From Macrostomum lignano (taxonomy: Eukaryota), in contig NIVC01001013.1 in the NCBI GenBank assembly GCA_002269645.1, positions 247,142 through 311,141 of the forward strand: a DNA stretch of 64,000 bases, read 5' to 3'. Shown here piece by piece: positions 4,260 to 63,744 of the stretch. The position numbers were made by a program, and so were the translations under genes. Below the pieces are notes generated by a model. It had not been told where the DNA came from, ran no database searches, and saw only the letters and a program-made list of their open reading frames with translations. Position 1 is the first letter of the stretch. Every line of letters begins with the position of its first letter.

Positions 4260-4519
4260 TATGTGTATAGCACTCAACTTGTGGCATTCTGATCAGTTGA
4301 TTTTATGCTGCATGTATATTGTTTTAAAGTCAAATACATTGCATTTATACAGTTTCTTACTACGATTAGAAAGTAAATAATAAACTGTTAATATTTTTCT
4401 AGTTTTTTAATATGGCCGATTGTAACGATGTATTCGAGTCCTTAGTGATTTTACACCCTGTAACGACTTTAAGACTGTAAAGAAATAGTCTTCGATGCTA
4501 TTACTACTGGTTTTTTTAG

Positions 4520-4980
4520 ACTAGAATTACATTTTTGGGCTGGAGATTACTGGTTTGAGATTTATATTACAGTTTTGAGTTTGATATTACCGGTTTTGTA
4601 GATTCATGTTACAGTTTAAGGCTGAAGATTACTGGTTTTGTAGATTCATATTATAGTTTTAGGCTGGAGATTACCGGTTTTTTAGATTCATATTACAGTT
4701 TTGAGTTTGATATTACAGGTTTTGTAGATTCATATTACTGTTTTAGGCTGAAGATTACTGGTTTTGTAGATTCAATCATATTACAGTTTTAGATCGATAT
4801 TACAGTTTTAGTAGATTCATATTAATTTTATATTCGATATTACAGGTTTTCTAGATTCATATTACAGTTTTAGATTCAATATTACAGGTTTTGTAGATTC
4901 ATATTACAGTTTTAGTCTGGAGATTACTGGTTTTGTAGATTTATATTTCAGTTCTAGGCTGGAGAATTACTGGAGTTTCA
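4520..4980. repeat. Degenerate T-rich tandem repeat (AGATTCATATTACAGTTTT core) between DNAJC17 and TFIP11
   Basis: Repeated TTTTGTAGATTCATATTAC and GGCTGGAGATTACTGG modules. Confidence 0.7.
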
Positions 4981-5082
4981 GATATCGCAGGTGAGAACTT
5001 GAGCGCACTCGCTGACCCCTCACCTACCCGCTCACTGAACATTGCAGCCAGCAGCCGCTAACGCCCAAGCGCACAACCTACA

Positions 5083-8000
5083 ATGGATGACGATGAAGAA
5101 GAGATGGAGCGCTTCGACATGACGGGGGCCGATTGGAAATATTCCATGGACCCGCTGGCCCAGCGGCGCCGAATGTCCAAGAAGCAGGCTTGGGCGGGCG
5201 TGTTCGCCAGCGACTCCGAAGACGAGGACGACGATGACGCCTTCGGCAATCGCCGCGGCTTCGGCAACCGGCGTCGCCGCGGCGGCGGAGCCGGCCGAGA
5301 CCGAGCCGGCGGTCCCATCAGTTTCGTTAGCGGCGGCGTCAAAGGCGGCCAGTCGGCCATGGATGATGATGACGATAAAGGAGGAAGAGGAGCAGCGGCT
5401 GATGAAGCTGGCGGCGGCGACATCACGGATGAGAGCGACGAGGAGATGCTGAGCGTGCGGCTGATCGAGCAGCGCCAGGCCGAGCGCAGGCAGCCGCAGC
5501 GGCCAAAACAGTCGGCCAATGATCGGCAGCGCCAGCAGCAGCAGGCCCAGGCGGAGCAGGGCTTCGGCCACTGGGAGCGGCACACCCGCGGCATCGGCAT
5601 GAAGCTGCTGGAGCAGATGGGCTACAAGCAGGGCAAAGGCCTCGGCAAAGACCTAGCTGGTATTGTCACTCCCGTTCAGGCTACAAAGCGCAAAGGCAAA
5701 GAGGCTGTGGGATTTTATCCCGAACAATCGGCGCCGGTGCCCAGGCGCGGCAACGAAGAGACGGTGACGGACGCGACCGCCAAAGCCACCTCACTTGCTG
5801 CTGCAGCCCGCTACAAGCGAAGTCAGCAGCAGCAGCAGCAGCCAAGGTACGCCATAAAAACACGAGAAGAGATTCTACGGGACGGAGCTAAAAAAGCGCC
5901 AGGCGGCGTGCCAGTGCTAGACAATGGCGCCAAAGTCAAGGTTTGTTCTGTCTATTGCAATGCAATTGTGGAGTGAATTATAACTCCGTTTCCCTGCAAT
6001 TCTCGGACCTTCTTCAATCACGCGACGCTACCCTCTGGTTCTTCAGGCTTCAGGTGTATCATTCAATCCTTCAGCTTACCGTCCTTCAGGTTATAGTTAC
6101 CCTCTCCTACAGTCCTTCAGGTTATAGTTACCCTCTCCTACAGTCCTTCAGGTTATAGTTACCCTCTCCTACAGTCCTTCAGGTTTTATTTTCCTCCCTC
6201 TCCTGTCCTTCAGATCATTTTACCCCCTCTCTCCTGTCTTTCAGGTCATTGCTACCCCCTCTCTCGATCTCGTCCTTCAGGCCATTGTTACTGTCTCTAT
6301 TCAGTTTTTCAGCCTGTAGTACCCCTAGTCCTTCAGGTTGTTGTTGATTTTACCCTATACCAGTTCGTAGTTATCGTTTAATCCCAGCTATCGTATCTAC
6401 CCAATATTCTATCCAGGTGATCGACATGACCGGGCCTCAGCAGCGGGTGTACGACGGCTATTCGGCGCTATCCCGATCGGCGGCCGGCGCGGACGATGAC
6501 GCGCTCGGTTCGGCAGCAGCCGAGGGCCAGCAGCAGCAGGGTGGCCAGCGCCGGTTCGACTGTCCCGCCCTGATGCACAACCTGGCCAGATTGGCCGACG
6601 CAGCCGAGGCTGAAATCGTTCGAACCGATCGGCAGCAGCGGGAGGATCGCGACAAATTGGCCAGCCTGCGAGCCGAGACCCAGCGACTGCAGCGAGGCCG
6701 TCGGGCTGTTCAGCTAGCCGAGTTGGACAGCCTCATCCGGCTGCTGGACGCCTACGACTCGGTTGCTAACCGGGGCGCCGGCCTGCCGGACGTGTGCGAC
6801 CTGGCCAAGAAGTTTCTGCAGTCAGCGCCGGCCGCGTACCGGCCGCTAGCCGCTGCTATGGTTACACCGGCTGCTAGGCGCTCTCTGGATGGCTGGCAAC
6901 CTCTGCTAGAGCCCGGCAGAGGCGCCGCTTGCGCTCGGCTGGTGCGCGAAGCTCTGGCGCCGGCCAACGATTCAATTGACGCCATCCTGTCCGAGTCGCT
7001 GCTGCCGCAGGTTCGACGCGCGCTGGCCCAGTGGAGTCCGAGGCAACCGGCCGAAGCTCTGGCTTTGGTGCAGGCGCTGCGAGGCCAGGCGCCCGGCATT
7101 GAAGATCTGATTAATACCGTTGTGAAGCCCGCGCTGCAGAGTGAGCTGCAACTGTGGGATCCGACTAGGGATCCGCAGCCTGTGCACGAGTGGTTGCAGC
7201 CCTGGTCTGCCGAGCTGGCGCTGGATGCCATGCACGAGCAGGTGAGAGACTGCTGTTTATCCATTGTGACCTGGTATTTATCCATTGGTATCTGATGCTT
7301 ATCGATTGGGATCTGATGCTTATCCATTGGGATCTGATGCTTATCCATTGTGACCTGATGCTTATCCATTGTGACCTGATGCTTATCCATTGGGTTCTTA
7401 TGCTTATCCATTGGGATCTGATGCTTATCCATTGTGACCTGATGCTTATCCATTGGGATCTGGTGCTTATCCATTGTGACCTGATGCTTATCCATTGGGA
7501 TCTGATGCTTATCCATTGGGATCTGATGCTTATCCATTGGGATCTGATGCTTATCCATTGCTATCTGATGCTTATCCGTAGTTTTCTGCTGCTAAATATT
7601 GCGGATCTGGCAATGATGCCAAAGCCTGTATAACCAATACCTTAACACACGAATACTGCAGGTATTGCAGAAGCTCGGCCAGTGCTTTGGCCAGTGGCGC
7701 CCGGACGACCTGAGTGCCAAAGGCGTCCTAACGCCATGGCGCGGCGCCGTGCGACCCCAACTGCTGGCGGCCTTCCTGCAGCGGCACGTTTTGCCCAAGC
7801 TGATCGACTGTCTGTCCGGGATGCGAATTGACCCGTCTGGCCAGCCGCTGGAGCAGTGGGTCTGGTGCAAGGCCTGGTGGGATCTGCTCAGTCCGCAGCA
7901 GATTGCTTCGCTGCTCGAGCGCGGCTTCTTCCCGGGATTTCACCGGGCCCTGTCGGCCTGGCTAGCCAGCCCCGGTGTCGACATGGCCCAGGTGGCCGCC

Positions 8001-8755
8001 TGGTACGCCGGCTGGCGGGACCAGCTGCCACCTGCGTGTCTGGACCTGCCTGGGGTGCAGCACCAGCTGGGTCAGGTCTGTGCACCCGATTTTCGCCTAC
8101 CCGCTCTGCATCGTTATACTTTCTCTGCCTGTTCTACCCTCACTTCCTCTTTCCTAACCTTTCTCATCTCTCTTCTCCCCTCATCTCTCTTCTCCTCTCA
8201 TCTCTCTTCTCCCCTCATCTCTCTTCTCCCCTCACCTCTCTTCTCCTCTCATCTCTCTTCTCCCCTCATCTCTCTTCTCCTCTCATCTCTCTTTTCTCAT
8301 CTCTCCTCTTCCATCCTGCTTTCTCACCTCCCTCTCCTCTATTTTAATATATTTCTACTCTAATTATTTAATTCACCATCCCGCAGGCCCTTCGCCTGAT
8401 GGACGCCGCCTTCTCCGGCCAGGAACCGGCTGCCGTTGTAGCCGCCGGCGCCGCTGCCGCTGCCGCCGCCGCGGCCACCGCTTCCAGCTCTTCCGTAGCG
8501 CCGCAGGCTCAGCCAGCCACTGTAGTGAACTATAATCACGGCCTGCTGGGCGCCAGGGACCTTCTAGAACGCCGGGCCCAGGAGCACGGCATCGTGTTCG
8601 CCCCCACCGGCCGCCGGCATCACGGCAAGCAGGTGTTCAATTTTGGTCGGCTACAAATTTGCGTTGAACGCGGCGTAATTTACTGGCTGACTGAGGGCCA
8701 ATGGCGCCCAGTGTCCCTTGACGATGTTATGAATAGGGCCACCATGCGGCAGTGA
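5083..8755 (+). CDS. TFIP11: Tuftelin-interacting protein 11 / Ntr1-Spp382-like G-patch spliceosome disassembly factor, 4 exons: 5083-5940, 6417-7241, 7662-8075, 8387-8755 (~821 aa)
   Basis: G-patch ([38 protein letters not shown]). The conserved KVK|VIDMTG motif is split by intron 1. GCFC-type region ([19 protein letters not shown]) and C-terminal [31 protein letters not shown]. All three GT-AG introns join in phase 0. Confidence 0.92.
6087..6185. repeat. 31-bp tandem repeat x3 in TFIP11 intron 1
   Basis: Unit TTATAGTTACCCTCTCCTACAGTCCTTCAGG, with degenerate copies continuing to ~6340. Confidence 0.85.
7258..7578. repeat. 21-bp minisatellite (~15 copies) in TFIP11 intron 2
   Basis: Unit CCATTG(G/T)GA(T/C)CTGATGCTTAT. 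Confidence 0.92.
8160..8340. repeat. CT-rich low-complexity repeat in TFIP11 intron 3
   Basis: Recurring CTCATCTCTCTTCTCC modules. Confidence 0.8.
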
Positions 8756-14893: not shown

Positions 14894-15360
14894 CTTGATA
14901 ATAATCTAAGTTGATTGAAATGCATCAAATGTAAGATAATATAGGCCTAGTAATATTTTTTTTAAATTAATTAATATAGAAATAATAAATTTTTACTTGT
15001 ATATTATAATGTTTTGATAGGTTACAAATAATATTTAGCAAAGAAGGATAGTAAGGTTGATAGAAGTAATAAATTTTCTTAGCTCCCTTTATAATTCTTT
15101 TAACCAAAGTAGAAAAAGTTATTTATCATTTTGTCTATGGCCAATGTTATCCCTTTCTTATGAACAACTTTGCTTATAGCCTAGAAAGCTATTTAATAGA
15201 ATAAATATTCTCTAGAATTGAATAGAGAATATTTATCTTATTATAGTGGTTTATTGTTAAATTGACTATACCAATTTTCTATTGCATGAACCTGCAGTCC
15301 AGCCCCTAGAGTAGCATCACCCCATTGATAGCTGAAGCAGACAATCCTACTGACCTTGCT

Positions 15361-17370
15361 ATGTCATCCAGCACTGGACACCGCTCTGGCAAGCTGGCAG
15401 CTGCAAAGAGCGAGAAGGACCTACTCCAGGACGTGCTGGGCATGCTGCTAAGAGACGAGGACAATAAGTACTGCGCCGACTGCGATGCTAAAAGTCCCCG
15501 CTGGGCCAGCTGGAACATTGGCGTATTCCTCTGCATCAGATGCGCCGGCATCCACAGGAAGCTGGGCGTGCACATCTCGCGAGTGAAATCTGTCAACTTG
15601 GACTCCTGGACAGCCGAACAGGTGGCTGGGGTGGCCGCTATTGGTAACTCGCTAGCCAGAGCCGCCTACGAGGCCAACGTGCCGGATGGATTCCGTCGGC
15701 CGCAGACGGACGCCACGCTTGAGCAGTTCATCAAGGCTAAGTATGAGGAGAAGCGCTACTTAGCCAGGGACTGGGTGCTGCCTAAACCCGATCCAGCTGC
15801 TGTGTACGATCTGCTCAAGACCAACACTGCTCAGCGACGAGCTGCCGCCGCTGCTAACTCTGCCGCCGCTGACGGCGTGTCGCCGAAGCTGCCGGCGCCC
15901 GCGCCCGCGCCAGCCAGGCGCTCTGCTGGCAACACCACCGCGGCAGTGAAGCCTCCGCCGCAGGCTGCGTCTCAATCAAAGCCTGAGCCACCGCCCCCAG
16001 AGCAGCAGCCGGCAGCTCCTTCAGCAGTGCCGCAGCAGCCGCCGCCAGATCTGCTTGGCGGTCTGGCCGATGACGGATTTGGCGACTTCTCTAGCGGCGG
16101 CGGCGGTGGCGGAGTCGTCAGCTCGCACGCCAACGATTTGGCATTCTTAAGCGAGGGCAGCGCCACGACCGCCACTGCTGCCGACCTGTTTGCCAGCGAT
16201 TCTTCTAATTCTGCCAACACCGCCGCTGCTCCAAAGAAATCTATGAAAGATTCTATCATGGCTTTGTATGGTCAGCAGAATGCCGCTGCTGCTGCTGCTG
16301 CTTCTAGTGGAGGCGGCGGATTTCTAGCTCACAATCAGCAGCAGCAACACTTTGGCGGGATGCAATACTCGATGAGTACTCCTCAACTAGCTTCTGTAGC
16401 CAATTCAACTGGCTACCAGCCTATGCCGCAGCAGCAACAGCAGCAGCAGTATCAGCAACAATATCCATTTCTGCAGCAGCAACATCAACCTCAACAGCAG
16501 CAGCAGCAGCAGTTCTCGGCTCTGTACAGTCAAACTGCTGGCGCTCTCTACTCAACAGGTGGGCAGTTTGGTCCGCCGCAATTTGGCGGCGTGCCGACAC
16601 CGTCTTCTCAGCAACAGCAGCAGCAGCAGCAGCACTATGGATTTCAGCCACCAGGCTATGTCAATAATCAGTCTGCTTATTTGCTACAAGTAAGTGTTGC
16701 TTAATATTTTTTATTTGGTTTCCTCTATACTAATTTTTAGCACTTTATTGTAGGATAGATTATAGATCTTATATACACTAGATAGGCCACTGGCCACTCC
16801 CCATTCAGACAATGAATAGAAAATGACACCCAATAATGACTCGGGGACAAACAATGTTCGCTTGCACTACTGAAAACTAATCGTCAGTAGTCTATGGACA
16901 TAGACGAAAAAAATATATTTCATCGCAATACTTAAGTATAAGATCCATGTCTATGGTATATACTATAAATGAAGTTCTCTGTGGCCTTGAGACTTCAAAT
17001 TTGGGTTTTAACTTCGAATGCCCCATTCCACGGCTTGGGTGTCTGCCATTGCAACTGCTTTTTTCAACAATGAAATTTTCAAAGCCCATTTGAACTTTCT
17101 TTGCCCTTTTACTTGCTCTGTCAGCGGCCCGCCATGTCCACAATAATTCAGTAACTTTAGCTAATAATGTATAATAATAATAATAGTATTAGTACTATTA
17201 ACCGTTTGCGGCAATTCCCACAGATACAGAGCCAGATGGCCGGATTAAACTTCAAAGGTGCCGCCAATTCTGCTGGCTTTCCGCAACAGCAGCAGCAGCA
17301 GCAGCAACAGCCGCAGCAATACGCTGCTCAACAGCAGTCTGCTTTTGCTGCTGGCGACTTTTGGAACTAG
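15361..17370 (+). CDS. SMAP1: Stromal membrane-associated protein (SMAP1/2-type ArfGAP), 2 exons: 15361-16689, 17224-17370 (~491 aa)
   Basis: ArfGAP zinc finger CADC-x16-CIRC with [10 protein letters not shown] and [23 protein letters not shown]-like [13 protein letters not shown] motif and Q-rich tail. CAA|GTAAGT donor at 16690 and cccacag acceptor at 17223 join in phase 0 to IQSQMAG...FWN*. Confidence 0.88.
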
Positions 17371-17699: not shown

Positions 17700-17845
17700 A
17701 TAGTAGTAATAATAATATTAATAATAACAATAATTGATTACACCTGCCCAAGTGGCAGATGTGCAACCGACAGCTCAGCCGCAGCGATTGCGCGGCGCAT
17801 CTGAAGGCTGCGTACGGCTGTTCGGTCCAAGGACTGGGGGCAGGG
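17700..17845 (-). mobile_element. 5'-truncated inverted copy of the same SINE 3' end
   Basis: 17731-17840 is the reverse complement of 18091-18183 (CAGATGTGCAACCGACAGCTCAGCCGCA...CTGCGTACGGCTGTTC.GTCCAAGGACTGGGGG) with a ~22-nt indel. It runs into a (TTA)n-like tail on the minus strand. Confidence 0.65.
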
Positions 17846-17910: not shown

Positions 17911-18185
17911 GGGTTTTAGCCTAGTGGTTACTCCCACGACTCACGACTTGAAGGTCGGGGTTCGACTCCCAATCCTAATCGGAACGATTTGTGTCCTTGA
18001 GCAAAGACACTTAACTCTGCATTGCTTCAGTTCACCCAGCTGTAAAATGGGTGCCAGCATTAGCTGGGGTAATTGAGGGTGTGTGGTGACCCCCCCCCAG
18101 TCCTTGGACTGAACAGCCGTACGCAGCATGCGGCTGAGCTGTCGGTTGCACATCTGGCCGTTAGAGCAGGTGTAGTCAATTATAT
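17911..18185 (+). mobile_element. tRNA-derived SINE with CORE-like central domain
   Basis: A-box-like TAGCCTAGTGG and B-box GGTTCGACTCC. These are followed by GTGTCCTTGAGCAAAGACACTTAACT...CAGCTGTAAAATGGG, which resembles the MIR/CORE domain (GTGACCTTGGGCAAGTCACTTAAC...CTGTAAAATGGG). AT-rich 3' end. Confidence 0.7.
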
Positions 18186-19311
18186 TAAACTATAAAGTGG
18201 ATACAATGAATTGCTAAACTATTCAAGGTAAAGGAAAATTGAATAGTTCCTCGTAATACGCTACTTGGTATTTTCTCGGCAGTGGATAATTTTATAACAC
18301 CTTAATAATTGCTTGCTCATTAATTACGCAAAACAGTATGCACTGATTCCAGTTAGTAATTTACAAAAATTCATTAATATTCATTGATATGATTGTTCAG
18401 ACAAATTATAGCAAAATTTGACCGTGTTAAAATTCTGGCAAATTTAAATGCTACATCAGAACTGCCTGTTCGGTATTCGATTCGATCTTCACAGCTCTAT
18501 CCAGTTGTATTTCGCATGCAAGCTATGATATAACTGTTCTAAGTTTTATTTGTTGATTAGCCCTTTTATTCGTTTTGTTCCTCGTCAGAAATGTATTCGA
18601 TTGGATTAATGCATTCAAAAATTGCATAATCGCTTTTTTGACAATTAAATTTTAATTGGTGTCTGTTCGCTTGTCCTTATTAATTTTTTTCTTCTATTAT
18701 TTATTAATCTATGCTACAATTTTCGCAACAAAGTGTGCTTAAAAAGTTGATAAGCGCAGAGTTTTTTCCGAGCGCATATATTTTCAATTGGCAGGTCCCT
18801 CCCTCGCTACTAACTGTTTTGTTTTGAGTAGTCTAATATGAATGTAAATTTTGATGATTATAAAAAAGTTTGCGCGTATTTTTTTAATAAATTAACTACA
18901 GACGTGTCCTGACCGTGTTTTTAGTTTTGTTAAATTTGTTGATGTTGTCCCAATGCTGGGGGGGCTAGAAATATTGATGACGGGGTCTGGATAAAATCAA
19001 CCTTTATTTTATGTGTAGCTGCAATAATTTGCTTGTCTATTTATTTAATAGGACTTGCCATTTATAAATGTTGTTATTGAAGACTGTTCTTCGAGTACCC
19101 CTGTCTCATCAGCCCCCGTGTCTAAATAACAACTTAAAGACCAGATTAAGCTTATTCTTTAGGATATTTAATTGTCTTGCAAATCAGTGTAATCAGATAC
19201 TAGCAAAATAACGGTTGTTGTCTTGTGCTTTTATTTATTTATATCACCAAAATATTTGACTTTGTCATCACTAGCACTGGTCGCTGGTCATTTTGAGTCC
19301 GTCATGGTCAC

Positions 19312-26345: not shown

Positions 26346-27109
26346 AATGACGCATGTCAGACAGAAATTCGCGGTTTTGTGTCAAAGAGTAAGTCATGTA
26401 TAGTAAAATAGTACAGAGTAAAAGAATAAAGTGTAAAAAGAAAATCTTGCATAAGTGCAAAATTATATTAAGGTGAACAGCTGCCTATTTCAAATACACA
26501 ACCATCAGTCTGAGTCAGTGTAATCTTCATCTTCAACTAGTCTCATTCCAAGATTTCATGAAATCAGTTCCAAACAGGCATACTGAACCGTTACGCATAG
26601 ATCAGGCAAAATTTTCAGAAAAAGTTCGCAGATAGCCTAACGAGCTTCTGCGGGGTTTCTTTCGTGTGAAAGGAAGCTCACCGATCTTCTAGAAGAGACA
26701 GACATTTTAGCTTATTAAGTTAATTAAAAATAGATCATCTATATATGATATGCATTTCAGGTAGAAGTGACATAGGTTTTGCCTCTGCTCATCCTCATTT
26801 TCGAGTCTCATCTCCCACCAGCTCTTGAGCTCTGCTCCTCAGAAGCCTTTTTTGCAAGGCCGACCGCGTGCAGAGGAGATTGCCTTAGCCACGTGGCACG
26901 CGAGTTCTTGCAAGAAGAAAACGAATGAATATGTCGGACACCTGCGCAAAAGGGAAGCTGGATGATGGAGAAGGGAGTATGGAGCTGATCTGCGCTAAAA
27001 ATGGAAGCTACTAGTGTTGAGCGATTCCGTGATGGGGATTATTCCAGACTGGACTCGTTCTAGGATGCTGAAGCATTTTCCTCAGATTTGAATTCCTTCA
27101 ACTCCCAGA

Positions 27110-27930
27110 TCTTCAGATCCTCCCAGATCCTCCCAGATCCTCTCAGATCCTCTCTTATCCCCCCAGATCCTCAGATCCTCCCAGATCCTCCCAGATCCTC
27201 TTAAATCCTTCCAGATCCTCTCAGATCCTCTCTTATCCCCCCAGATCCTCAGATCCTCAGATCCTCCCAGATCCTCCCAGATCCTCCCAGATCCTCCCAG
27301 ATCCTCCCAGATCCTCCCAGATCCTCCCAGATCCTCCCAGATCCTCTCAGATCCTCCCAGATCCTCCCAGATCCTCCCAGATCCTCCCAGATCCTCCCAG
27401 ATCCTCCCAGATCCTCTCAGATCCTCTTAAATCCTTCCAGATCCTCTCAGATCCTCTCTTATCCCCCCAGATCCTCAGATCCTCCAGATCCTCCCAGATC
27501 CTCCCAGATCCTCCCAGATCCTCCAGATCCTCCCAGATTCTCCCAGATCCTCCCAGATCCTCCCAGATCCTCCCAGATCCTCCCAGATCCTCCCAGATCC
27601 TCCCAGATCCTCCCAGATCCTCCCAGATCCTCCCAGATCCTCCCAGATCCTCCCAGATCCTCTCAGATCCTCTCAGATCCTCCCAGATCCTCCCAGATCC
27701 TCTCAGATCCTCCCAGATCCTCCCAGATCCTCCCAGATCCTCCCAGATCCTCCCAGATCCTCTCAGATCCTCCCAGATCCTCCCAGATCCTCTCAGATCC
27801 TCTCAGATCCTTCCAGATCCTCTCAGATCCTTCCAGATCCTCTCAGATCCTTCCAGATCCTCCCAGATCCTTCCAGATCCTCCCAGATTCTCCCAGATCC
27901 TCCCAGATCCTCCCAGATCCTTCCAGCTCC
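27110..27930. repeat. 10-bp minisatellite
   Basis: Unit CAGATCCTC(C/T). Confidence 0.93.
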
Positions 27931-29806
27931 TCCCAGCTCCTCCCAGTTTTTTCACTTGTCTAACTCAGTAACCAGGGCAAAAAGAAATTGGCTGCAGCAG
28001 TTGAGCAGGCAGGCAGGTTTTGAGCAGCTGCACAGGGGTGGCCTCGCCATCTCCAGCAGCCAATCGGTTCGCTTGGACTCGCCGGATTGGCCGACCTCCG
28101 CGACAGAAACAGTTTCTGCGCCAAGCTCCAACCCGGCGCTGCAGATTTCTTGAGCTTATCTTCCGCCTGCTTCTGCTAGCGCCTTATTCCAGCCTCCCTG
28201 CCCCATCGTGTCCAGTCCAAACACAGCTGCCCGATTCGCTTCGTCCCGCAGTCGCCAACCCGCTCGCCAAATCCCTTCTTAATCCCCTCCAGCGGGACTC
28301 CCATCCTTGCCCGGCTCCTTCTAGAAGAAGATCTCCAGCTTTGAGGCTTCGAAGGCCGCCTTTTCTATTATTAAAATCTCAAGTGTCAAACGATTCAGGT
28401 GAGTATCGATTTAACAGCATTCTCCCATTGCTCCCATTGTCTGGTCATTTTGCTCAACCAAATTGGGTTGCTATTTTTGTTGCTTCCCACAGATTTTTTG
28501 CCTCATTTGTTTCGTAAAATTTCTAATTATAAAGTTTTCCTCCTTATTTATTAATAACTTTTCCACCGCTTTTCCTGTGCATCCGCCCCTTACCGCCCAG
28601 TTTTACGACAAATCCGCCCTATTTCCGCCCCCTTCGACTCCGGGTCCCGCCTTCATCTCCATAGCTTCTGTTTTCCGTCATTCCGTTTTAAAACGGATTT
28701 TAACAAATTTTTAGCAAACCGCCGTTCATTTTTATCCCGAAATTGCGTGCGCAAAAGAAAAACCTATTTAGACCCTGTGCGGCTATACGGGAGAGGGCAG
28801 GCCATTGGGGATGAAGCTGCGCCGAGCTGTCGCTGCTTACGCCAGCGAGTTTTTGTCTCCAGTCTCTGCACCCTGGGGGGCTGCAGGCGCTGCTCCCTTC
28901 CTCTATTTCTCTCTCTCGACCCACCCCACCCGACCCCTCCCGGGCCATCAGAGTGACATGTTTTCAGTCCTTTAATCCTCTCGCTAATCCCTTCCATTCG
29001 AATGGCAGGGCCCCCGGGAAAGAGGCGGGAGACACGGGGCAAAAGCAGGGCGAGAGAGGCAGCTGATCGAAAAAAATGGCTTGAGCCCATCCTCCGCTTG
29101 TCTCTCCCCTGACAATTGCAGGGAAAATATGAATAGAAGACAAACTCGAGCTCAGGTGGGGCAACAGGGGGGGGGGTGGTGGCTCCGATGGGGCTCCGAA
29201 ACTCGGCTTCCCATTTCGCTAAAACTTCCCCCCCTCAGCATCTCCTCTGACAGCCATCGGCTGTCCCGAAAGTTCCCCAACTCTTGCTGACCCGCCGCCC
29301 CCAGACGAATATCCCTAATCCCCTACTAAATCCATCGCGATGGCGACGACTCGACTTACGATGCGGCAACTCCGTTCAGCGGCCCCGCGTGGTGCACCTG
29401 CAGACAGGCCGCCTGCTTTTAGTCTCAGCCTCTCCTCTTTCCAGCTGGGGATTAGAGATCCCCCAGCCCGTGCTGATGAAGGTGACGGGGGAGTGGGGTT
29501 CAAGCGACAGTTTCACCCAACGCCACTCGCCCTAAAACTCCCATATACGCTGTCTGCGTCTCTCTACCTGTCTATCCGAAATCCGAGGCCGACCCATTAA
29601 CTCGGCGCACGCTCGCCCCACTCGCCGCGGTGTCAGTGGGACCCATCGTCCTGAGCTCAAGTTTCCTCGTGCCTCAGGCCTCTCTGGCTCTCTATTTAGT
29701 ATTTTATCGACACAAGAACTGCAGCTGCCGGTGTTCTTCATCGTTCTTCAAATCGGGAACTGAATACCAACTATAGGTTTGGTGATTTCATTCCAGCTGC
29801 AGAGCG

Positions 29807-31038
29807 ATGGACTGGAGCGGCTATCACCACGGCTCGCAGTTCAATTATAACCCGCATCCGGGAGGCGCCAGCGGACTTGGCAAGCAGGGCTTCGCCATGA
29901 TGGGCAACCTGGGCGTCGGGATCGCCACACCGCCGGCTCATCACGAGATGCTCCATCATCCGGCCCTGACCGCCTACTCCAGTAAGACTGAACTCTGTCA
30001 CACTACTCTGTCTCGTATTCATGAGACGAACTCGAGTTTCTCTAAGTTTTCATTTTCCAATTTGCAGCCCCTGTGCGCAAGCAGCGGCGCGAGAGGACCA
30101 CCTTCACCAGGGCGCAGCTGCAGATCCTGGAGGAGCTGTTCGGCAAGACCAAGTACCCGGACATCTTCATGCGCGAGGAGGTGGCGCTGCGGATCAACCT
30201 GCCGGAGTCGCGGGTGCAGGTCTGGTTCAAGAACCGCCGGGCCAAGCAGCGCCAGCAGCAGAAGCAGAAGGAGGCCGGCGAGAAGGCCGCCCACTGCGGC
30301 GTGTCGGCCGCCTCCGCCGGACAGCCGGTCGGACACGCCGGACACGCCGGACACGCTGGACACGCCGGACACGCCGGACACGCCGGACACGGAGCGAAGG
30401 CCGTCTCCGTCTCGGCTTCCGCCGCGCCGCTGGCCGGAGGCTCCGCACTCGCCGCCGCCACCGCTGCCGCTGCGGCCGCTGCCGCCAACATCGGCGGCAG
30501 AGGCGGCGGCGCCGGCATCGGCGGCGGAGGCGGCGGCGCCGGCATCGACATGGCCGGCTGCCTCCACGACGCCGGCGGTGGCGCTGTCAAGTGCGAGGAC
30601 GTCGACTCGAGCAGCCCGTCGCCCGCCAAGACGCTCAGCCTGCCCGGCTCGGCCGAGGCCTCCAAGCGCAGCCCCGCCGTCTCCGCCAACGGCCACGCCG
30701 CCGCCGCGGCCGCCGCTGCCGCGCACTTCCTCACCGACTCTACCGGACACTCCGGCGCCGCCGGCTGGGGCGCCTCGGCCGCCGGACGCCTCGCCGGACC
30801 CAACAGCCCGACTGACGGCGGCTCCGCCTACGCCACCTGCGTTCAGCAGCAGCACCGCAGCGCTGCCGCAGCCGCAGCCGCCGCGGCCGCTGCCGCTGCC
30901 TACCACAACCAGACCTACGGACAGTACAGCGCTACAGGCTACCCTCCGTATGACTACCTGCGACCTGCTGCCTACCCGCAGCAGCCGCCAGACTATGACT
31001 ATCAGGGCTGGTCATCGCGCAAGCTGCAGCTGCTGTGA
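29807..31038 (+). CDS. otx: Orthodenticle/Otx K50 homeobox protein, copy A, 2 coding exons: 29807-29981, 30068-31038 (~381 aa)
   Basis: Homeodomain [57 protein letters not shown] (K50, Otx diagnostic) and an Otx-tail-like end [15 protein letters not shown]. The 86-nt phase-1 intron GTAAGA...TTTGCAG (29982-30067) joins exon 1 in frame. Confidence 0.93.
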
Positions 31039-31709
31039 ACTCTTTGACACTTGATTGATATCGGATTAATGATTTATTGTTCGGTCATTGTTGGGACTTT
31101 GCGTCAAAGTGCAAACCGTTTTTGTGTCGGGTTTTCATCCGGGATTTCACTATTAAGCTTTTCTATATATTCTCCTTATGCGTTTGAGTCCCCTAGCGAT
31201 GAGCAATATGTACAGCCATAGGAATGCGTTCTAAATAAGTGTAGTTATTATTGTTTAAATTTTGTTTAAATGCTCTCCTTGTAGACAGTAATTATTATAG
31301 CTTCTGGCACGAATTTCTGCGATATTACTTACTTTACTCACACCTGTCACTCTGGTCTCTCTGTTTGTTAAAATTAGAAATTTAAACATGTTTTTAAGCA
31401 TCTGTCTCTGCAGATCGTCCAGAACTGTCAATGTTTAGTAAAGGCCTGTAGCTATGCACTACTTTGTCGCGTCTCTAAATTTAAATCATTCTGCATAAAG
31501 ACTGAATCTATAGGCAACTGGTTAACAATAAAGCTGATTTTTATAAGTGCGAAATGCAAGTATATATACATATATATTTATATGAAATATATATTGAGCA
31601 ATGAAAACTAATACTGTATGTTTAAGAATAACTATATAAGACGGATGTATTTCAGTTGTAGTTCATTTTTTTGTTAAAAGTATAGCGTGAGAAAATTCTA
31701 GTCTTAGAA

Positions 31710-32500
31710 CAGCGCCCCAAACAGCCCCCAAACAGCCCTCAAACAGCCCCCAAACAGCCCCCAAATAAACCCCAAACAGCCCCTCAACAGCCCCCAAACA
31801 GCCCCCAGAAAGACCCCCAAACAGCCCCCAAACAGACCTCCAACAGCCCCCCAAACAACCCCTGTAAACAGCCCCCCCAAACAACCTCAAACAGCTCTCA
31901 AACAGCCCCAAACAACCTCAAACAGCTCTCAAACAGCCCCAAACAACCTCAAACAGCTCTCAAACAGCCCCAAACAACCTCAAACAGCTCTCAAACAGCC
32001 CCAAACAACCTCAAACAGCTCTCAAACAGCCCCAAACAACCTCAAACAGCTCTCAAACAGCCCCAAACAACCTCAAACAGCTCTCAAACAGCCCCAAACA
32101 ACCTCAAACAGCTCTCAAACAGCCACAAACAGCTCTCAAACAGCCCCAAACAACTTCAAACAGCTCTCAAACAGCCCCCCAAACAACCTCAAACAGCTCT
32201 CAAACAGCCACAAACAGCTCTCAAACAGCCCCAAACAACCTCAAACAGCTCTCAAACGGCCCCCCAAACAACCTCAAACAGCTCTCAAACAGCCCCAAAA
32301 AACCTCAAACAGCTCTCAAACAGCCCCAAACAACCTCAAACAGCTCTCAAACAGCCCCAAACAACCTCAAACAGCTCTCAAACAGCCTCAAACAACCTCA
32401 AACAGCTCTCAAACAGCCCCAAACAACCTCAAACAGCTCTCAAACAGCCCCAAACAACCTCAAACAGCTCTCAAACAGCCTCAAACAACCTCCAACAGCC
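31710..32500. repeat. AAACAGCCCC-derived 10/11-bp repeat forming a 31-bp unit, in the spacer between the two Otx 3' ends
   Basis: Unit AAACAACCTC-AAACAGCTCTC-AAACAGCCCC. Confidence 0.9.
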
Positions 32501-32914
32501 AGTATGCCAATCAATCCAAGCAACGCAGCAAACTGAAACGAAGCGACAAAAAGCACATTAAATATTGTTAACAGACGAGCAAATATATTATTGCGGCAGA
32601 CTAAGGATCAGAGCACGAACACAGGCGGTAAGCTATTCTTCAATTTGCATACGCTACATTTTAGTGAGAAAAGTTGCAATACTATGCAAAATTCAGAGAA
32701 GGAAATTACAAAAACAAATATATAGGGAGACTGAAGAGGCTTACATGTAACAGCCAAGCATTTTTCTTCTGCATTGGGGCCGGAATTTCAATGATCGGTA
32801 AGAAAACGGTGGCGGAGGCATGCAGCATACAAATCCAGATAAAGCTTATTAATTAATACACAGAGACTGTTTAGGCCGGACTATATATGGAATATTCCTG
32901 CTAAAGTCAGTGAG

Positions 32915-35900
32915 CTACAGCAGCTGCAGCTTGCGCGATGACCAGCCCTGATAGTCATAGTCTGGCGGCTGCTGCGGGTAGGCAGCAGGTCGCAGGTAGT
33001 CATACGGAGGGTAGCCTGTAGCGCTGTACTGTCCGTAGGTCTGGTTGTGGTAGGCAGCGGCAGCGGCCGCGGCGGCTGCGGCTGCGGCAGCGCTGCGGTG
33101 CTGCTGCTGAACGCAGGTGGCGTAGGCGGAGCCGCCGTCAGTCGGGCTGTTGGGTCCGGCGAGGCGTCCGGCGGCCGAGGCGCCCCAGCCGGCGGCGCCG
33201 GAGTGTCCGGTAGAGTCGGTGAGGAAGTGCGCGGCAGCGGCGGCCGCGGCGGCGGCGTGGCCGTTGGCGGAGACGGCGGGGCTGCGCTTGGAGGCCTCGG
33301 CCGAGCCGGGCAGGCTGAGCGTCTTGGCGGGCGACGGGCTGCTCGAGTCGACGTCCTCGCACTTGACAGCGCCACCGCCGGCGTCGTGGAGGCAGCCGGC
33401 CATGTCGATGCCGGCGCCGCCGCCTCCGCCGCCGATGCCGGCGCCGCCGCCTCCGCCGCCGATGTTGGCGGCAGCGGCCGCAGCGGCAGCGGTGGCGGCG
33501 GCGAGTGCGGAGCCTCCGGCCAGCGGCGCGGCGGAAGCCGAGACGGAGACGGCCTTCGCTCCGTGTCCGGCGTGTCCGGCGTGTCCGGCGTGTCCAGCGT
33601 GTCCGGCGTGTCCGGCGTGTCCGACCGGCTGTCCGGCGGAGGCGGCCGACACGCCGCAGTGGGCGGCCTTCTCGCCGGCCTCCTTCTGCTTCTGCTGCTG
33701 GCGCTGCTTGGCCCGGCGGTTCTTGAACCAGACCTGCACCCGCGACTCCGGCAGGTTGATCCGCAGCGCCACCTCCTCGCGCATGAAGATGTCCGGGTAC
33801 TTGGTCTTTCCGAACAGCTCCTCCAGGATCTGCAGCTGCGCCCTGGTGAAGGTGGTCCTCTCGCGCCGCTGCTTGCGCACAGGGGCTGCAAAGTTAATCC
33901 GATGAGGTTGCGTTCGGGCTTGAGAAAATGGCGCTAATGGGTTGAGTTCAGTTGTGTTACACGCACTGCCTTTCGTGTCTGAGCAGCTGCCCCAGGTGGG
34001 CCAACAAGCAGCGGGGAGCCGCAGCCGCCCCCTCTCGAATTCTCTCGGCTCGGCGAGCCCGGCGGGTGGGGGGTGCGCCGTTTTGTTTTAATCTGCAGCA
34101 TTCAAAGCAGACCTTCAATCCGCTGGGATTATTCCCTATACAGACAGGCGCGCCCCTTTGTAGCCAAATAAAATTCTTTCGCATCCACGCGAGAGGCTGG
34201 GGAGTCGCGTGTCGGGCGCTCTGCAAGGTCGGGTTGGCCTCCCCCCTATAGAGCAGTCAAGTATGCTCATCAATCTGAGCATTCCATTGAATGCGGCACT
34301 CAGGTGGTCAGTGATGGATTCGGCCTGATGCAGCCAGCGCCTGTGCTCAAGGACCGCGAGCATTTCTTTGTGTTGACGAAATCTTTCATTTTCTCCTATA
34401 GCCGCCTCGAGGCGGATTTTCTGTGAGTAAAAAGTAATAGTTGCATCGAGTGGGGGGATTACAGGTAGGAGGGGATACGGACTGGATTTTCGGTTTAATC
34501 AAGCTGAGTATCGAGAAAGATGGCTGAGGGCGGAGGCGGTAAGGTAATCAAGTTAATAGCAGCAAATAAATGCCCCGAAGCAATTATTTCAGTTAGAAGA
34601 TTGATCGCTTTCCTTTCGAGGTGTGTTGACAACATTCAGCCTCAACCTTGACCTGTTCTGGAAACTTACTAGATACTTCTTGAAGTGTTTTCTAATTCAC
34701 AGGCCTCTGAATCCGCTACCCCGCTCCTTCAGTGAGCTGCTCAATCCGCTACCCCTGCTCCTTCAGTGAGCTGCTCAATCCGCTACCCCCGCTTCTTCAG
34801 TGAGCTGCTCAATCCGCTACCCCCCGCTTCTTCAGTGAGCTGCTCAATCCGCTACCCCCGCTCCTTCAGTGAGCTGCTCAATCCGCTACCCCCGCTCCTT
34901 CAGTGAGCTGCTCAATCCGCTACCCCCCGCTTCTTCAGTGAGCTGCTCAATCTGCTACCTCCGCTCCTTCAGTGAGCTGCTCAATCCGCTACCCCCGCTC
35001 CTTCAGTGAGCTGCTCAATCCGCTACCTCCGCTCCTTCAGTGAGCTGCTCAATCCGCTACCCCCGCTCCTTCAGTGAGCTGCTCAATCCGCTACCCCCGC
35101 TCCTTCAGTGAGCTGCTCAATCCGCTACCCCCCGCTTCTTCAGTGAGCTGCTCAATCTGCTACCCCCGCTCCTTCAGTGAGCTGCTCAATCCGCTACCTC
35201 CGCTCCTTCAGTGAGCTGCTCAATCCGCTACCCCCCGCTTCTTCAGTGAGCTGCTCAATCTGCTACCTCCGCTCCTTCAGTGAGCTGCTCAATCTGCTAC
35301 CTCCGCTCCTTCAGTGAGCTGCTCAATCCGCTACCCCCGCTTCTTCAGTGAGCTGCTCAAGCCTCTACCCCCGCTCCTTCAGTGAGCTGCTCAAGCCTCT
35401 ACCCCGCTCCTTCAGTGAGCTGCTCAAGCCTCTACCCCCGCTCCTTCAGTGAGCTGCTCAATCCGCTACCCCCGCTCCTTCAGTGAGCTGCTCAATCCTC
35501 TACCCCCGCTCCTTCAGTGAGCTGCTCAATCCGCTACCTCCGCTCCTTCAGTGAGCTGCTCAATCCGCTACCTCCGCTCCTTCAGTGAGCTGCTCAATCC
35601 GCTACCTCCGCTCCTTCAGTGAGCTGCTCAATCCGCCACACCCGCTCCTTCAGTGAGCTGCTCAATCCGCTACCTCCGCTCCTTCAGTGAGCTGCTCAAT
35701 CCGCTACCTCCGCTCCTTCAGTGAGCTGCTCAATCCGCTACCTCCGCTCCTTCAACTGGCCGCACCAACCGCCAAAACTCTCGAATCTATATTAGGCTCC
35801 TATTTCCCTTGTTTCAAACTCACTTGCATAGGCAGACAGTGCCGGATGGTGCTGCAGCATCTCGTGATGCGCTTGGGCCGCCGCCGCCGCCGCCGCCGCT

Positions 35901-36190
35901 GTCTGCAGAGGCATTCCGTCGCCTCTACCGCCGCCGCCGGCGCTGCCGCCAGAGCCGCAGGTGGCTCCGGTGGAAAATCCGCCGATAGCTGAGCCGCCGC
36001 CGAGACCGACAGTCAAGTCGCTGTCGTTGCCGCAGCCGAATATGCCGCCTCCTACGCTGCTCGACATGTCGGGCATCGGGTAGCCAAACTGAGTCTGGCC
36101 AACCAAACTATGATGGTGCTGGTGGTGGTGATGATGAAGCTGAGCCTGTTGCTGATGAGTCTGAGTCTGGTAGGCTGTGTTCCAGTCCAT
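32915..36190 (-). CDS. otx: Orthodenticle/Otx K50 homeobox protein, copy B, 2 coding exons: 36190-35824, 33885-32915 (~445 aa)
   Basis: Same homeodomain exon as copy A in reverse orientation. Exon 1 (MDWNTAY...[16 protein letters not shown]) is homologous to copy A exon 1. The phase-1 intron GTGAGT...TTTGCAG (35823-33886) joins in frame. Confidence 0.92.
34705..35752. repeat. ~34-bp minisatellite (~30 copies) in the Otx B intron
   Basis: Unit AATCCGCTACCCCCGCTCCTTCAGTGAGCTGCTC. Confidence 0.93.
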
Positions 36191-36229
36191 TTCCTGCAGA
36201 AAGGTTTAGGGAGCACGAATGATTTGCTG

Positions 36230-36442
36230 TCGCTATGCTGTTGCTATGCTGTTACTATGCTGTTGCTATACTGCTGCTATGCTGCTGCTATGCTGTTACT
36301 ATGCTGATGCTATGCTGCTGCTATGCTGCTGCTATGCTGTTGCTATGCTGTTGCTATGCTGTAACTATGCTGTAACTATGCTGTAACTATGCTGTAACTA
36401 TGCTGTAACTATGCTGTAACTATGCTGTTGCTATGCTGTTGC
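36230..36442. repeat. 11-bp repeat just upstream of the Otx B ATG
   Basis: Unit TATGCTG(TTGC/CTGC/TAAC). Confidence 0.85.
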
Positions 36443-37180
36443 TAAGCCGTTGTTCATGCTCAGTATAGCAACTTCCGATTCATTTGAGCAAACTGCTTCG
36501 AAGAAAGAAAATGGCATGGCTTCGCCCTTCTCCTCTGCTAAAGAAGATCCCAATCCTGCATGCTTGCTAATCCCCTCCCGGCTCTTCTTAATCCCCTTTC
36601 TCCTACCCAAATAATTCACCCCGTCTCCCGATACAAGTTGATGAAAAATGCGTGCCTTGTCTGTCTCCCCAAGCCTCGCCTTTGCCTCGCCCTCGCCCTT
36701 GTCGTTTCCCCCCTGCTTGCCCGGTTCCAGAGCTCGCCGCCTCCTCGCCCATCGCCATTTTCGCTCATACACCATGCATTTTAGCTGCTGTTATATGCCG
36801 ACAATTCCCCATCGAGCTCGAGACCCGAGGCATGAGCTGGGGGGAATGAGACTTCCCTCTGGGAGTTGCTGGCTATCGAGTATCAGTCGAGTTGATAAAG
36901 ATGAAAAACCTGCATGGCGAGAGGCGCTGGGCATGGAAACTTTCTGGGGGAGACGAGAAATTTCGAAATTTTCTGAAATTTCCAAACTCTGATACCTACG
37001 CTTGTAAAAGAGATTGCAATGTCTTAGTGCAGCTGTGCTCACGAGGACTCACCGACTGTTGAATTTGGCTATCATTTTATCGCAGCCGTTTAACTTAGAC
37101 TTAAAGCAAGACTCGCCTCTGTTCTGAATGCTGAGCAACTATAGCTCCATCTCTCCCTGCATCCCCAGCTTCTTCGGGTA

Positions 37181-49604: not shown

Positions 49605-52700
<3,096 letters not shown>

Positions 52701-63165: not shown

Positions 63166-63580
63166 TCAGAGAATGGCGCAGCAGCATCCGGATCCACCAG
63201 ACCTGGCCTTGGCTACGGCGCTCATCTCGCCGACGGCCACGCGGAATACCTCCTCAATGTTGTAGCCAGTCTTGGCCGAGGCCTCCAGGTAAGGACACGA
63301 CCAGGCTCGGCTGAGACTCTCGCCCATGTCCGGCGCTACCTGACGATAATCGGCCAGGTCGGCCTTGTTGCCAACCAGCACAATGGGACTGTTGGATTGG
63401 CCTTTGACTCGGTTAATCTGATCGCGCAACTGCTGTATATCTTGAAACGTCTGCATGGATGTTACGCTGAAGACTACAACAAAGCCTTGGCCATTTTTTA
63501 TGTATAAATCGCGCATTGAGGCGAACTGCTCCGTGCCAGCCGTGTCCAGAATCTCCAGCACTGCCGGCTGCTGGTCAACA
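63166..63580 (-). CDS. RAP2: Rap2-like Ras-family small GTPase, 3' coding exon only (5' exon with the G1 box not seen, probably beyond the window end)
   Basis: VDQQPAVLEILDTAGTEQFASMRDLYIKNGQGF (Rap2-type switch II), NKAD (G4), EASAK (G5) and C-terminal CCCAIL CAAX box. Acceptor ctccccag at 63582-63581 (phase 2). The ORF-track N-terminus upstream of this is intronic. Confidence 0.88.
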
Positions 63581-63744
63581 CTGGGGAGAGTGAGGCAGGT
63601 ATAAATTGCCTTATTATCAGCATTTGGGTGGCTGGGTGGCCGGCTGTCTTGCGCAACTACACAGTGCACTAGATAGAATCAATACAAGTGACTCAGCAGG
63701 GTTAGGGTCCGACCATTACAAGTATCGTACTGTCAATCAAAAAC

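What the first reader, a model, noticed from the sequence alone, without database searches (positions are those of the whole stretch)
30068..33885. The 971-bp inverted arms could flip the 1,876-bp spacer and swap the two genes' 3' UTRs
Crossover between near-perfect inverted repeats inverts the intervening DNA. Because the arms are the terminal coding exons, an inversion leaves both ORFs intact but exchanges their 3' UTR and poly(A) regions. This would be a potential flip-flop post-transcriptional switch or a standing inversion polymorphism. Read-through across the spacer would also yield a ~970-bp hairpin dsRNA able to silence both genes.
Basis: inference. Interest (0 to 1): 0.7.

Follow-up and report, generated by a model that had tools for sequence, protein, structure and literature searches.

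The report
Convergent Otx genes sharing one homogenised exon
Two tail-to-tail Otx homeobox genes of the flatworm Macrostomum lignano have an almost identical last coding exon, most likely because gene conversion keeps copying one onto the other; a flip of the DNA between them is geometrically possible, but nothing shows it acts as a switch.

Summary
The inverted repeat is real. Arms 30061-31036 and 32917-33892 are 976 nt with 2 mismatches, separated by 1,880 nt. Each arm is the coding part of the last exon of an Otx-type homeobox gene: A on the + strand (381 aa) and B on the - strand (445 aa). Identity starts 7 nt before the splice acceptor, stops at the stop codon (TGA vs TAG), and is random outside.

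The ATG exons are old paralogues, at most 75% identical over 60 nt. A third, unpaired Otx paralogue differs from the arms at 30% of homeobox third positions, while A and B differ at one site there. The best reading is concerted evolution of the terminal coding exon by gene conversion, possibly GC-biased. That is a known kind (Capitella Dlx, C. elegans col-12/13, Y palindromes).

A simulated arm crossover keeps both ORFs and swaps stop codons and 3' regions. There is no recombinase, no second orientation and no RNA evidence. By analogy, inversion would be a rare by-product of conversion, not a switch. Orientation polymorphism could not be tested, because no independent copy of the locus was retrievable.

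The parts
27971..28111 (+). Gene A (Otx-A) upstream non-coding exon; its 5' end is not defined
   Evidence: The N-terminal extension of the M. lignano UniProt model P0122 maps here. Exact reconstruction with a canonical GT donor after 28111.
28325..28398 (+). Gene A second upstream non-coding exon
   Evidence: P0122 residues 48-71 match at 100%. AG acceptor before 28325 and GT donor after 28398.
29797..29981 (+). Gene A ATG exon (ATG at 29807; 58 codons + 1 nt; phase 1)
   Evidence: AG acceptor before 29797 and GT donor at 29982-83. Splicing to 30068 gives a 381-aa ORF that is identical to P0122 across the junction.
29982..30067 (+). Gene A last intron (86 nt); its last 7 nt (TTTGCAG) are inside the repeat
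30061..31036 (+). Inverted-repeat arm A = coding part of gene A's terminal exon (CDS 30068-31038, stop TGA)
   Evidence: GC 73%, GC3 86%. Private derived G>A at 30499.
30085..30255 (+). Homeobox of gene A (K50 paired-like, Otx type)
   Evidence: Pfam PF00046, E=5e-21, residues 65-121. Best database hits are Otx/otd proteins.
31037..32916 (.). Unique spacer. It holds gene A's 3' UTR side (AATAAA at 31527), a 31-bp minisatellite (31708-32500) and gene B's 3' side (32914 down to about 32500)
   Evidence: The two halves share no homology. GC 42%.
31708..32500 (.). Strand-asymmetric minisatellite (about 25 x 31 bp, A+C 85% on the + strand); G-quadruplex motifs only on the - strand (31747-31829)
32917..33892 (-). 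Inverted-repeat arm B = coding part of gene B's terminal exon (CDS 33885-32915, stop TAG)
   Evidence: Private derived C>A at 33809, the partner of 30144; the outgroup has GGC like A.
33698..33868 (-). Homeobox of gene B; protein identical to A's
   Evidence: tblastn 100%; mirror coordinates of the Pfam match.
33886..35823 (-). Gene B intron (1,938 nt) containing a 34-bp x 31 minisatellite (34710-35754)
   Evidence: Donor CAA|GTGAGT at 35823 and acceptor TTTGCAG| at 33886; the only donor that gives an open, phase-compatible ORF.
35824..36190 (-). Gene B ATG exon (122 codons + 1 nt; phase 1). An old paralogue of A's ATG exon
   Evidence: Only MDW... and ...AHHEML(Q)HHPAL(S/T)AY(A/S) align with A. 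The best nucleotide block is 75% over 60 nt.

Best explanation
The locus is a pair of convergently transcribed (tail-to-tail) Otx/orthodenticle paralogues in Macrostomum lignano. The duplication is old: promoters, upstream exons, introns and 3' UTRs no longer align, and the ATG exons keep only two short motifs. The coding part of the last exon (homeodomain plus the whole C-terminal half, 323 codons) has been homogenised by non-allelic, arm-to-arm gene conversion, probably GC-biased. The tract ends at the splice acceptor and at the stop codon because only sequence held similar by purifying selection still offers the homology that recombination needs. The result is two genes with different regulation and different N-termini (58 vs 122 residues) but an identical DNA-binding and C-terminal module. 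Shown: the repeat, the gene models, the discordant divergence and the homogenised synonymous sites. Inferred: conversion as the process, its GC bias, and that it is recurrent and not a single event. A crossover resolution of the same intermediates would invert the spacer and swap the 3' regions. I regard that as a rare, unprogrammed by-product.
For: (1) 976 nt with 2 mismatches, and random identity immediately outside. (2) The boundaries coincide with the CDS: 7 nt before the acceptor, and the first base of two different stop codons. (3) Both genes have complete, phase-compatible GT-AG models. Gene A's four-exon model reproduces an independent M. lignano protein model (P0122) residue for residue. 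(4) The best-conserved block outside the arms is 75% identical over 60 nt, against 99.8% over 976 nt (Fisher p = 6e-18). (5) Outgroup test: over 67 homeodomain codons with the same protein, A differs from the unpaired paralogue L001 at 25 nt (23 synonymous; 30% of third positions) and from B at 1 nt. The identity is therefore not due to protein-level constraint. (6) Each arm carries one private derived change, as expected after a complete homogenisation. (7) GC3 in the homeobox is 0.97-0.99 in the arms and 0.85 in L001. At the 16 weak/strong-changing differences the arms carry G/C 13 times and A/T 3 times, consistent with GC-biased conversion. (8) The 0.2% arm divergence is below the 1.1% CDS divergence reported between M. 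lignano subgenomes, so homogenisation is recent (PMC10733133). (9) Close precedents exist: Capitella Dlx tail-to-tail pair, engrailed/invected, C. elegans col-12/13 and hsp-16, and Y palindromes.
Against: Only one assembly of one haplotype was available. No orthologous A-B pair from another species or subgenome could be retrieved, so the classical tree test (exon 2 grouping by genome, exon 1 by gene) was not done. A single recent replacement of one terminal exon cannot be told apart from recurrent conversion. There is no gradient of divergence towards the tract edges, which a long-running steady state might show. In a genome where 93% of read pairs multi-map, polishing could have inflated the identity somewhat. 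Gene B has no transcript or protein-model support here. The GC-bias evidence is modest (13:3).
Confidence: 0.8

Rival explanations
1. A single, very recent event and not ongoing conversion: one whole-exon conversion or a partial inverted duplication pasted gene A's terminal coding exon over gene B's (or the reverse).
For: Only 2 differences, one private to each arm. No divergence gradient towards the edges. Katju and Bergthorsson warn that ORF-limited identity can reflect partial duplication (PMC3966223).
Against: Breakpoints landing exactly at a splice acceptor and a stop codon are very unlikely for a random duplication. They are expected if exchange is limited to pre-existing homology. B has its own old Otx ATG exon, correct phase and its own stop codon. 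The very high GC3 of the arms suggests repeated biased exchange.
Confidence: 0.12
2. One reading: recombination between the arms flips the 1.9-kb spacer often enough to act as a flip-flop switch, or exists as a standing inversion polymorphism that re-pairs each Otx gene with the other's 3' UTR and poly(A) region.
For: The geometry was verified in silico: ORFs stay intact and stop codons and 3' regions swap. The arms (976 nt, 99.8%) are good recombination substrates. Inverted paralogues do produce functional inversion polymorphisms; the CTRB1-CTRB2 16.6-kb inversion swaps promoter and exon 1 and changes the expression ratio (PMC6145291).
Against: No recombinase, transposase or short specific sites are present. 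Only one orientation is seen. In Y palindrome P6, with far longer arms, inversion occurs at about 1.5e-5 per generation and is about 19-fold rarer than conversion. The two spacer halves share no homology and gave no trace of past flips. A programmed somatic switch by general recombination has no precedent in animal nuclear genes (my knowledge).
Confidence: 0.1
3. The pair works as a hairpin or antisense RNA source. Read-through from one gene across the spacer into the other arm gives a ~976-bp dsRNA, or convergent overlapping 3' ends give dsRNA. Either would feed RNAi and cross-silence both Otx genes.
For: Both arms would lie on one RNA if termination fails. Gene B has no canonical AAUAAA or AUUAAA on its strand until 31078, 40 nt from A's stop codon, so B transcripts might run antisense through A's 3' UTR. 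hpRNA loci derived from inverted gene copies are known in Drosophila (PMC10317233).
Against: Each arm has its own promoter-proximal exons and is a coding exon of an apparently intact developmental regulator. Gene A has AATAAA at 31527. Variant signals exist for B (AATAAG at 32850, AATAAT at 32592). No expression or small-RNA data are available. Rfam finds nothing in the window.
Confidence: 0.05
4. Assembly artefact: a fold-back chimeric read, or a mis-joined homeologue or allele, created a false inverted copy.
For: M. lignano is a neopolyploid with three about 98%-similar subgenomes and is hard to assemble. Gene B has no independent support.
Against: The copy is limited exactly to a coding exon. 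It has two differences and a different stop codon. It sits mid-window between unique, non-homologous flanks. It is spliced in phase to a distinct, anciently diverged Otx first exon. Fold-back artefacts give perfect palindromes with arbitrary ends, and a mis-joined homeologue would carry homologous introns and UTRs.
Confidence: 0.03

Closest known systems
Capitella teleta Dlx-a/Dlx-b tail-to-tail homeobox pair with gene conversion (PMC3199776); hexapod engrailed/invected is cited there
   Same: Closely linked, inverted tail-to-tail homeobox paralogues in a spiralian. The homeobox region is kept near-identical at the nucleotide level while the rest of the genes is diverged.
   Different: The Capitella tract is about 150 bp plus 31 bp and includes some intron. 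Here it is 976 nt covering the entire terminal CDS (homeodomain and C-terminal half) with CDS-exact ends. The gene family also differs (Otx, not Dlx).
C. elegans col-12/col-13 and the hsp-16 inverted modules (reviewed in PMC3966223)
   Same: Near-100% identity confined to ORFs or modules with completely diverged flanks. The hsp-16 modules form an inverted repeat with a short unique spacer (416 bp).
   Different: Those tracts cover whole genes or gene modules. Here only one exon of a multi-exon gene is homogenised, leaving different N-termini and regulation.
Human Y-chromosome palindromes, e.g. P6 (PMC3723533)
   Same: Arm-to-arm identity above 99.9% is maintained by GC-biased intrachromosomal conversion. 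Spacer inversion occurs as a rare crossover outcome.
   Different: Arms of about 110 kb on a non-recombining chromosome, against arms of about 1 kb that are single coding exons in an (apparently) ordinary chromosomal region.
CTRB1-CTRB2 16.6-kb inversion polymorphism (PMC6145291)
   Same: Oppositely oriented, near-identical paralogues. A crossover inside the genes leaves the mature proteins unchanged but re-pairs gene bodies with different regulatory parts and changes expression.
   Different: There the promoter, exon 1 and intron 1 are swapped and both orientations are documented in populations. Here the 3' UTRs would be swapped and only one orientation is known.
Drosophila hpRNA loci (PMC10317233)
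   Same: Inverted duplicates of gene sequence that can form long RNA hairpins.
   Different: In hpRNAs both arms lie in one non-coding transcription unit and siRNAs are documented. Here the arms are the coding exons of two separately promoted genes and no RNA data exist.

Membership tests
Otx/orthodenticle homeobox genes | Paired-like homeodomain with lysine at position 50 | tested here: met
   Pfam Homeodomain, E=5e-21. The sequence ...[14 protein letters not shown] has K50. The top database hits are Otx/otd/Crx proteins.
Otx/orthodenticle homeobox genes | C-terminal Otx domain or tail (Pfam TF_Otx PF03529; W-x-F-Q-V-L-like tail) | tested here: inconclusive
   PF03529 was not detected, as in most invertebrate Otx hits. 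The C-terminus ...[10 protein letters not shown] resembles the ...SWKFQVL end of an Otx hit (P0105).
Concerted evolution by non-allelic gene conversion between linked inverted paralogues | A near-identical tract embedded in genes whose other homologous parts are much more diverged | tested here: met
   2/976 differences in the arms against 15/60 in the best block of the ATG exon, Fisher p = 6e-18.
Concerted evolution by non-allelic gene conversion between linked inverted paralogues | Synonymous sites homogenised (not explained by protein constraint) | tested here: met
   Same protein over 67 codons: 23 synonymous differences to the unpaired paralogue L001 and 1 between A and B.
Concerted evolution by non-allelic gene conversion between linked inverted paralogues | Paralogues within a genome more alike than orthologues between genomes (tree test with a second species or subgenome) | not testable with these tools
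   No second A-B locus could be retrieved.
Concerted evolution by non-allelic gene conversion between linked inverted paralogues | GC enrichment of the converted tract | tested here: inconclusive
   Homeobox GC3 is 0.97-0.99 in the arms and 0.85 in L001. At weak/strong-changing differences the arms carry G/C 13 times and A/T 3 times. The direction is as expected but the sample is small.
Recombinase-driven invertible switches (Hin/Gin/Fim invertons, FLP/2-micron) | A site-specific recombinase encoded nearby, with short specific inverted sites at the borders | tested here: not met
   No recombinase or transposase domain in the window's ORFs. The arms are 976-nt coding exons.
NAHR inversion polymorphism between inverted paralogues (CTRB1-CTRB2 type) | Inverted repeats long and similar enough for homologous recombination | tested here: met
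   976 nt at 99.8% with a 1.9-kb spacer.
NAHR inversion polymorphism between inverted paralogues (CTRB1-CTRB2 type) | Both orientations present among individuals or haplotypes | not testable with these tools
   A single sequence only; no reads or other assemblies were reachable.
hpRNA / endo-siRNA hairpin loci | Both arms in one transcript, with small RNAs mapping to the arms | not testable with these tools
   No RNA data. The arms belong to two convergent genes. A poly(A) signal lies at 31527 on the + strand, and none is canonical on the - strand until 31078.
Fold-back or haplotype assembly artefact | Perfect palindrome with arbitrary ends, or flanks that are also homologous | tested here: not met
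   Two mismatches, CDS-exact ends, different stop codons and non-homologous flanks.

The most novel reading that the evidence does not exclude
The spacer is a recurrent or standing inversion, differing between M. lignano lines, between the three subgenomes or between sister species. It would re-pair two differently regulated Otx genes with two different 3' UTRs and measurably change their expression. Alternatively, convergent read-through makes dsRNA that cross-silences both genes. Either way the exon-sized palindrome would be a regulatory device and not a passive by-product of conversion.
Probability: 0.1. Interest if true: 0.6.

Novelty: new member of a known kind. Interest (0 to 1): 0.3.

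Why it matters
It is a clean example of exon-limited concerted evolution in a key head and eye patterning gene. Two Otx genes keep independent promoters, N-termini and UTRs, but recombination forces them to share one DNA-binding and C-terminal module. This has practical consequences in M. lignano:
- Exon-2 probes, RNAi triggers and guide RNAs will hit both genes, and short reads cannot be assigned to either.
- Phylogenies built on the homeobox will misdate the duplication.
- If the spacer orientation turned out to vary, the locus would be a compact natural system for measuring conversion-to-crossover ratios and 3'-UTR effects in a transgenic-tractable flatworm.

Tried and rejected
- I tried to retrieve an independent copy of the locus, to test spacer orientation and do the tree test. 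The exon-2 ORFs, the 415-aa read-through ORF and P0122 are not on record.
- All three protein searches found only a partial gene A model (P0122) and an older paralogue (P0002/L001). The searches were visibly lossy, since each missed a hit found by another. Absence of a gene B model is therefore weak evidence.
- L001 was first taken as the orthologue from another species. I rejected this once P0122 matched gene A exactly. L001 is a paralogue, far more diverged than the genome's duplication-derived copies.
- I looked for homology between the spacer and L001's 3' flank as a trace of past flips, and found none.
- I looked for homology between the two spacer halves and found none.
- I looked for neighbouring genes within 10 kb to use as handles. 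There are only translated minisatellites.
- Rfam found nothing.
- I considered cDNA-templated conversion as the reason for exon-exact ends. It cannot be separated from DNA-DNA conversion limited by homology. The shared TTTGCAG is weak evidence, since L001 also has ...GCAG.
Full report
**Observation.** The window contains one long inverted repeat: 30061-31036 pairs with 32917-33892, 976 nt, with 1,880 nt between the arms. A base-by-base comparison finds two mismatches, 30144 C/A and 30499 A/G, which is 99.8% identity. Identity in the 70 nt beyond either end is 23-26%, which is random. A self-BLAST of the whole window shows no other long dispersed repeat; the rest are tandem arrays.

**What the arms are.**
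- Each arm encodes [12 protein letters not shown]...[12 protein letters not shown], a paired-like homeodomain with lysine 50 (Pfam Homeodomain, E=5e-21), followed by about 260 low-complexity residues ending ...[10 protein letters not shown].
- Database hits are Otx/orthodenticle/Crx proteins throughout.
- Gene A (+ strand): ATG at 29807, GT donor at 29982, AG acceptor before 30068, stop TGA at 31036-38, 381 aa.
- Gene B (- strand): ATG at 36190, donor CAA|GTGAGT at 35823, a 1,938-nt intron, acceptor before 33885, stop TAG at 32917-15, 445 aa.
- These are the only two homeoboxes in the window.
- The repeat begins 7 nt inside each intron (TTTGCAG) and ends at the T of the two different stop codons. 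It is therefore co-extensive with the coding part of the terminal exon.

**Organism and independent support.**
- A partial UniProt model from Macrostomum lignano (P0122, A0A1I8IW91) is identical to gene A across the ATG exon, the splice junction and the homeodomain.
- Its N-terminal extension is reproduced exactly by two further upstream exons with canonical GT-AG sites: at least 27971-28111 and 28325-28398, joining at 29797.
- The window is therefore M. lignano or something nearly identical, and gene A's structure is independently modelled.
- A second M. lignano Otx (P0002, contig NIVC01001954.1, locus L001) is a paralogue. It is 87.6% identical in the homeobox, about 74% in the tail and about 71% in the ATG exon. 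It stands alone, with no inverted partner within 10 kb.
- That divergence far exceeds the 1.1% CDS divergence reported between the three M. lignano subgenomes (PMC10733133). L001 is therefore an older duplicate and serves as an outgroup.

**Why gene conversion.**
- Outside the arms, A and B are old. The ATG exons (58 vs 122 codons) align only at MDW... and ...AHHEML(Q)HHPAL(T/S)AY(S/A). The best nucleotide block is 75% over 60 nt. Introns (86 vs 1,938 nt), upstream regions and the two spacer halves do not align at all.
- The contrast of 15/60 differences there against 2/976 in the arms gives Fisher p = 6e-18.
- Protein constraint cannot explain the identity. Over 67 homeodomain codons that encode the same protein, A differs from L001 at 25 nt (23 synonymous; 30% of third positions) but from B at one.
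- Each arm has one private derived change. B's GGA contrasts with GGC in both A and L001. A's AGA breaks a 27-bp internal repeat that is perfect in B. This is the pattern expected after a complete homogenisation followed by new mutations.
- The arms are very GC-rich: GC 73% and GC3 86% overall, against a 42% GC spacer. In the homeobox, GC3 is 0.97-0.99 in the arms and 0.85 in L001. At the 16 weak/strong-changing differences the arms carry G/C 13 times and A/T 3 times. This fits GC-biased conversion, but the sample is small.
- CDS-exact ends are what one expects when only selectively conserved sequence retains enough homology for exchange.
- The same pattern is documented for the Capitella Dlx tail-to-tail pair and engrailed/invected (PMC3199776), for C. 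elegans col-12/13 and hsp-16 (PMC3966223) and for Y palindromes (PMC3723533).

- I simulated crossovers at four positions in the arms. In every case both ORFs remain intact and full length. Only the stop codons (TGA and TAG) and everything downstream change partners. The geometric claim is correct.
- Nothing indicates a switch. The window's other ORFs are a TFIP11-like G-patch/GCFC gene, an ArfGAP and a Ras-family GTPase. The ORFs near the pair are translated minisatellites. There is no recombinase or transposase.
- In Y palindrome P6, whose arms are about 100 times longer, inversion occurs at 1.4-1.7e-5 per generation against 2.5-3.2e-4 for conversion. I therefore treat inversion here as a rare by-product.
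- A neutral or mildly functional inversion polymorphism, as at CTRB1-CTRB2 (PMC6145291), remains possible. I could not test it, because no independent assembly or reads of this locus were reachable.

**The dsRNA idea.**
- A read-through RNA would indeed contain both arms.
- Gene A has AATAAA at 31527. Further matches on the + strand are AATAAA at 31764 and ATTAAA at 32557.
- Gene B has no canonical signal on its strand until 31078, 40 nt from A's stop codon. It has only variants at 32850 (AATAAG) and 32592 (AATAAT).
- Antisense overlap of the two 3' ends is therefore conceivable.
- The central minisatellite is 85% A+C on the + strand and carries G-quadruplex motifs only in gene B's sense. It could act as a pause or termination element. 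This is speculation.
- Rfam finds nothing. Without RNA data the idea stays open but unsupported.

**Artefact?** A fold-back or mis-join would not produce all of the following: a copy limited exactly to a coding exon, two differences, a different stop codon, non-homologous flanks, and in-phase splicing to a distinct ancient Otx first exon. Polishing in this highly multi-mapping genome might have slightly inflated the identity.

**Verdict.**
- The feature is real and well defined.
- Best explanation: concerted evolution of the terminal coding exon of two convergent Otx paralogues by gene conversion (confidence 0.8).
- A single recent event cannot be told apart from recurrent conversion on present data.
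- It is a new member of a known kind.
- The flip-flop and hairpin readings are geometrically sound but unsupported.
- Interest is modest (0.3). It would be higher if long reads revealed both spacer orientations.

Noticed in passing
window 27102-27946: A 10-bp minisatellite (CTCCCAGATC, about 86 copies) ends 25 nt before the first mapped exon of gene A (27971). It therefore sits in or next to its promoter or 5' end.
   Followed up: partly
window 34710-35754 and 36225-36452: A 34-bp x 31 minisatellite fills half of gene B's intron. An 11-bp x 21 array (TGCTGTTGCTA) lies 35 nt upstream of gene B's ATG. The whole Otx locus is riddled with arrays that could themselves promote recombination.
   Followed up: no
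window 31708-32500 (G4 motifs at 31747-31829, - strand): The spacer minisatellite is extremely strand-asymmetric (A 41%, C 44%, G 7%, T 9% on the + strand). It has G-quadruplex motifs only on gene B's sense strand. It may be a directional pause or termination element between the convergent genes.
   Followed up: partly
window 31073-31078 (- strand AATAAA): The only canonical poly(A) hexamer on gene B's strand in the whole spacer lies 40 nt from gene A's stop codon. If it is used, B's 3' UTR would span the entire spacer and overlap A's 3' UTR in antisense.
   Followed up: partly
window 17709-17840 and 17981-18193; L001 3092-3335: An inverted-repeat element upstream of gene A (arms about 73% alike) matches a segment 7 kb upstream of the paralogous Otx gene in L001 at 80-90% identity. 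It is either a mobile foldback or MITE-like repeat, or a conserved upstream element shared by the Otx paralogues.
   Followed up: partly
L001 12355-12498 (M. lignano contig NIVC01001954.1): The annotated protein P0002 ends in a different reading frame from the conserved Otx tail, which tblastn finds intact in another frame. This is probably an indel error in that assembly or a mis-model, not a real truncation.
   Followed up: no
window 49608-52592: A 3-kb array of a 24-bp unit (about 124 copies) produces 900-1,090-aa 'ORFs' in several frames on both strands. These are artefacts of the repeat. Many further arrays (14-, 23-, 32-, 17-, 19-, 20-, 52-bp units) fill 38-54 kb.
   Followed up: partly
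window 30330-30391 / 33562-33623 and 30489-30547 / 33406-33464: Inside the shared exon there is a 9-bp x 7 repeat encoding (HAG)n and a 27-bp x 2.2 repeat encoding Gly-rich sequence. One of the two arm differences (30499) lies in the latter.
   Followed up: yes
window 3492-8363, 15325-16704, 63166-63669: The neighbouring host genes are a possible RRM protein, a TFIP11-like G-patch/TIP_N/GCFC gene, an ArfGAP-domain gene with a 459-aa single ORF, and a Ras-family GTPase exon on the - strand. The Otx pair lies in a gene-poor interval of more than 40 kb between them.
   Followed up: partly
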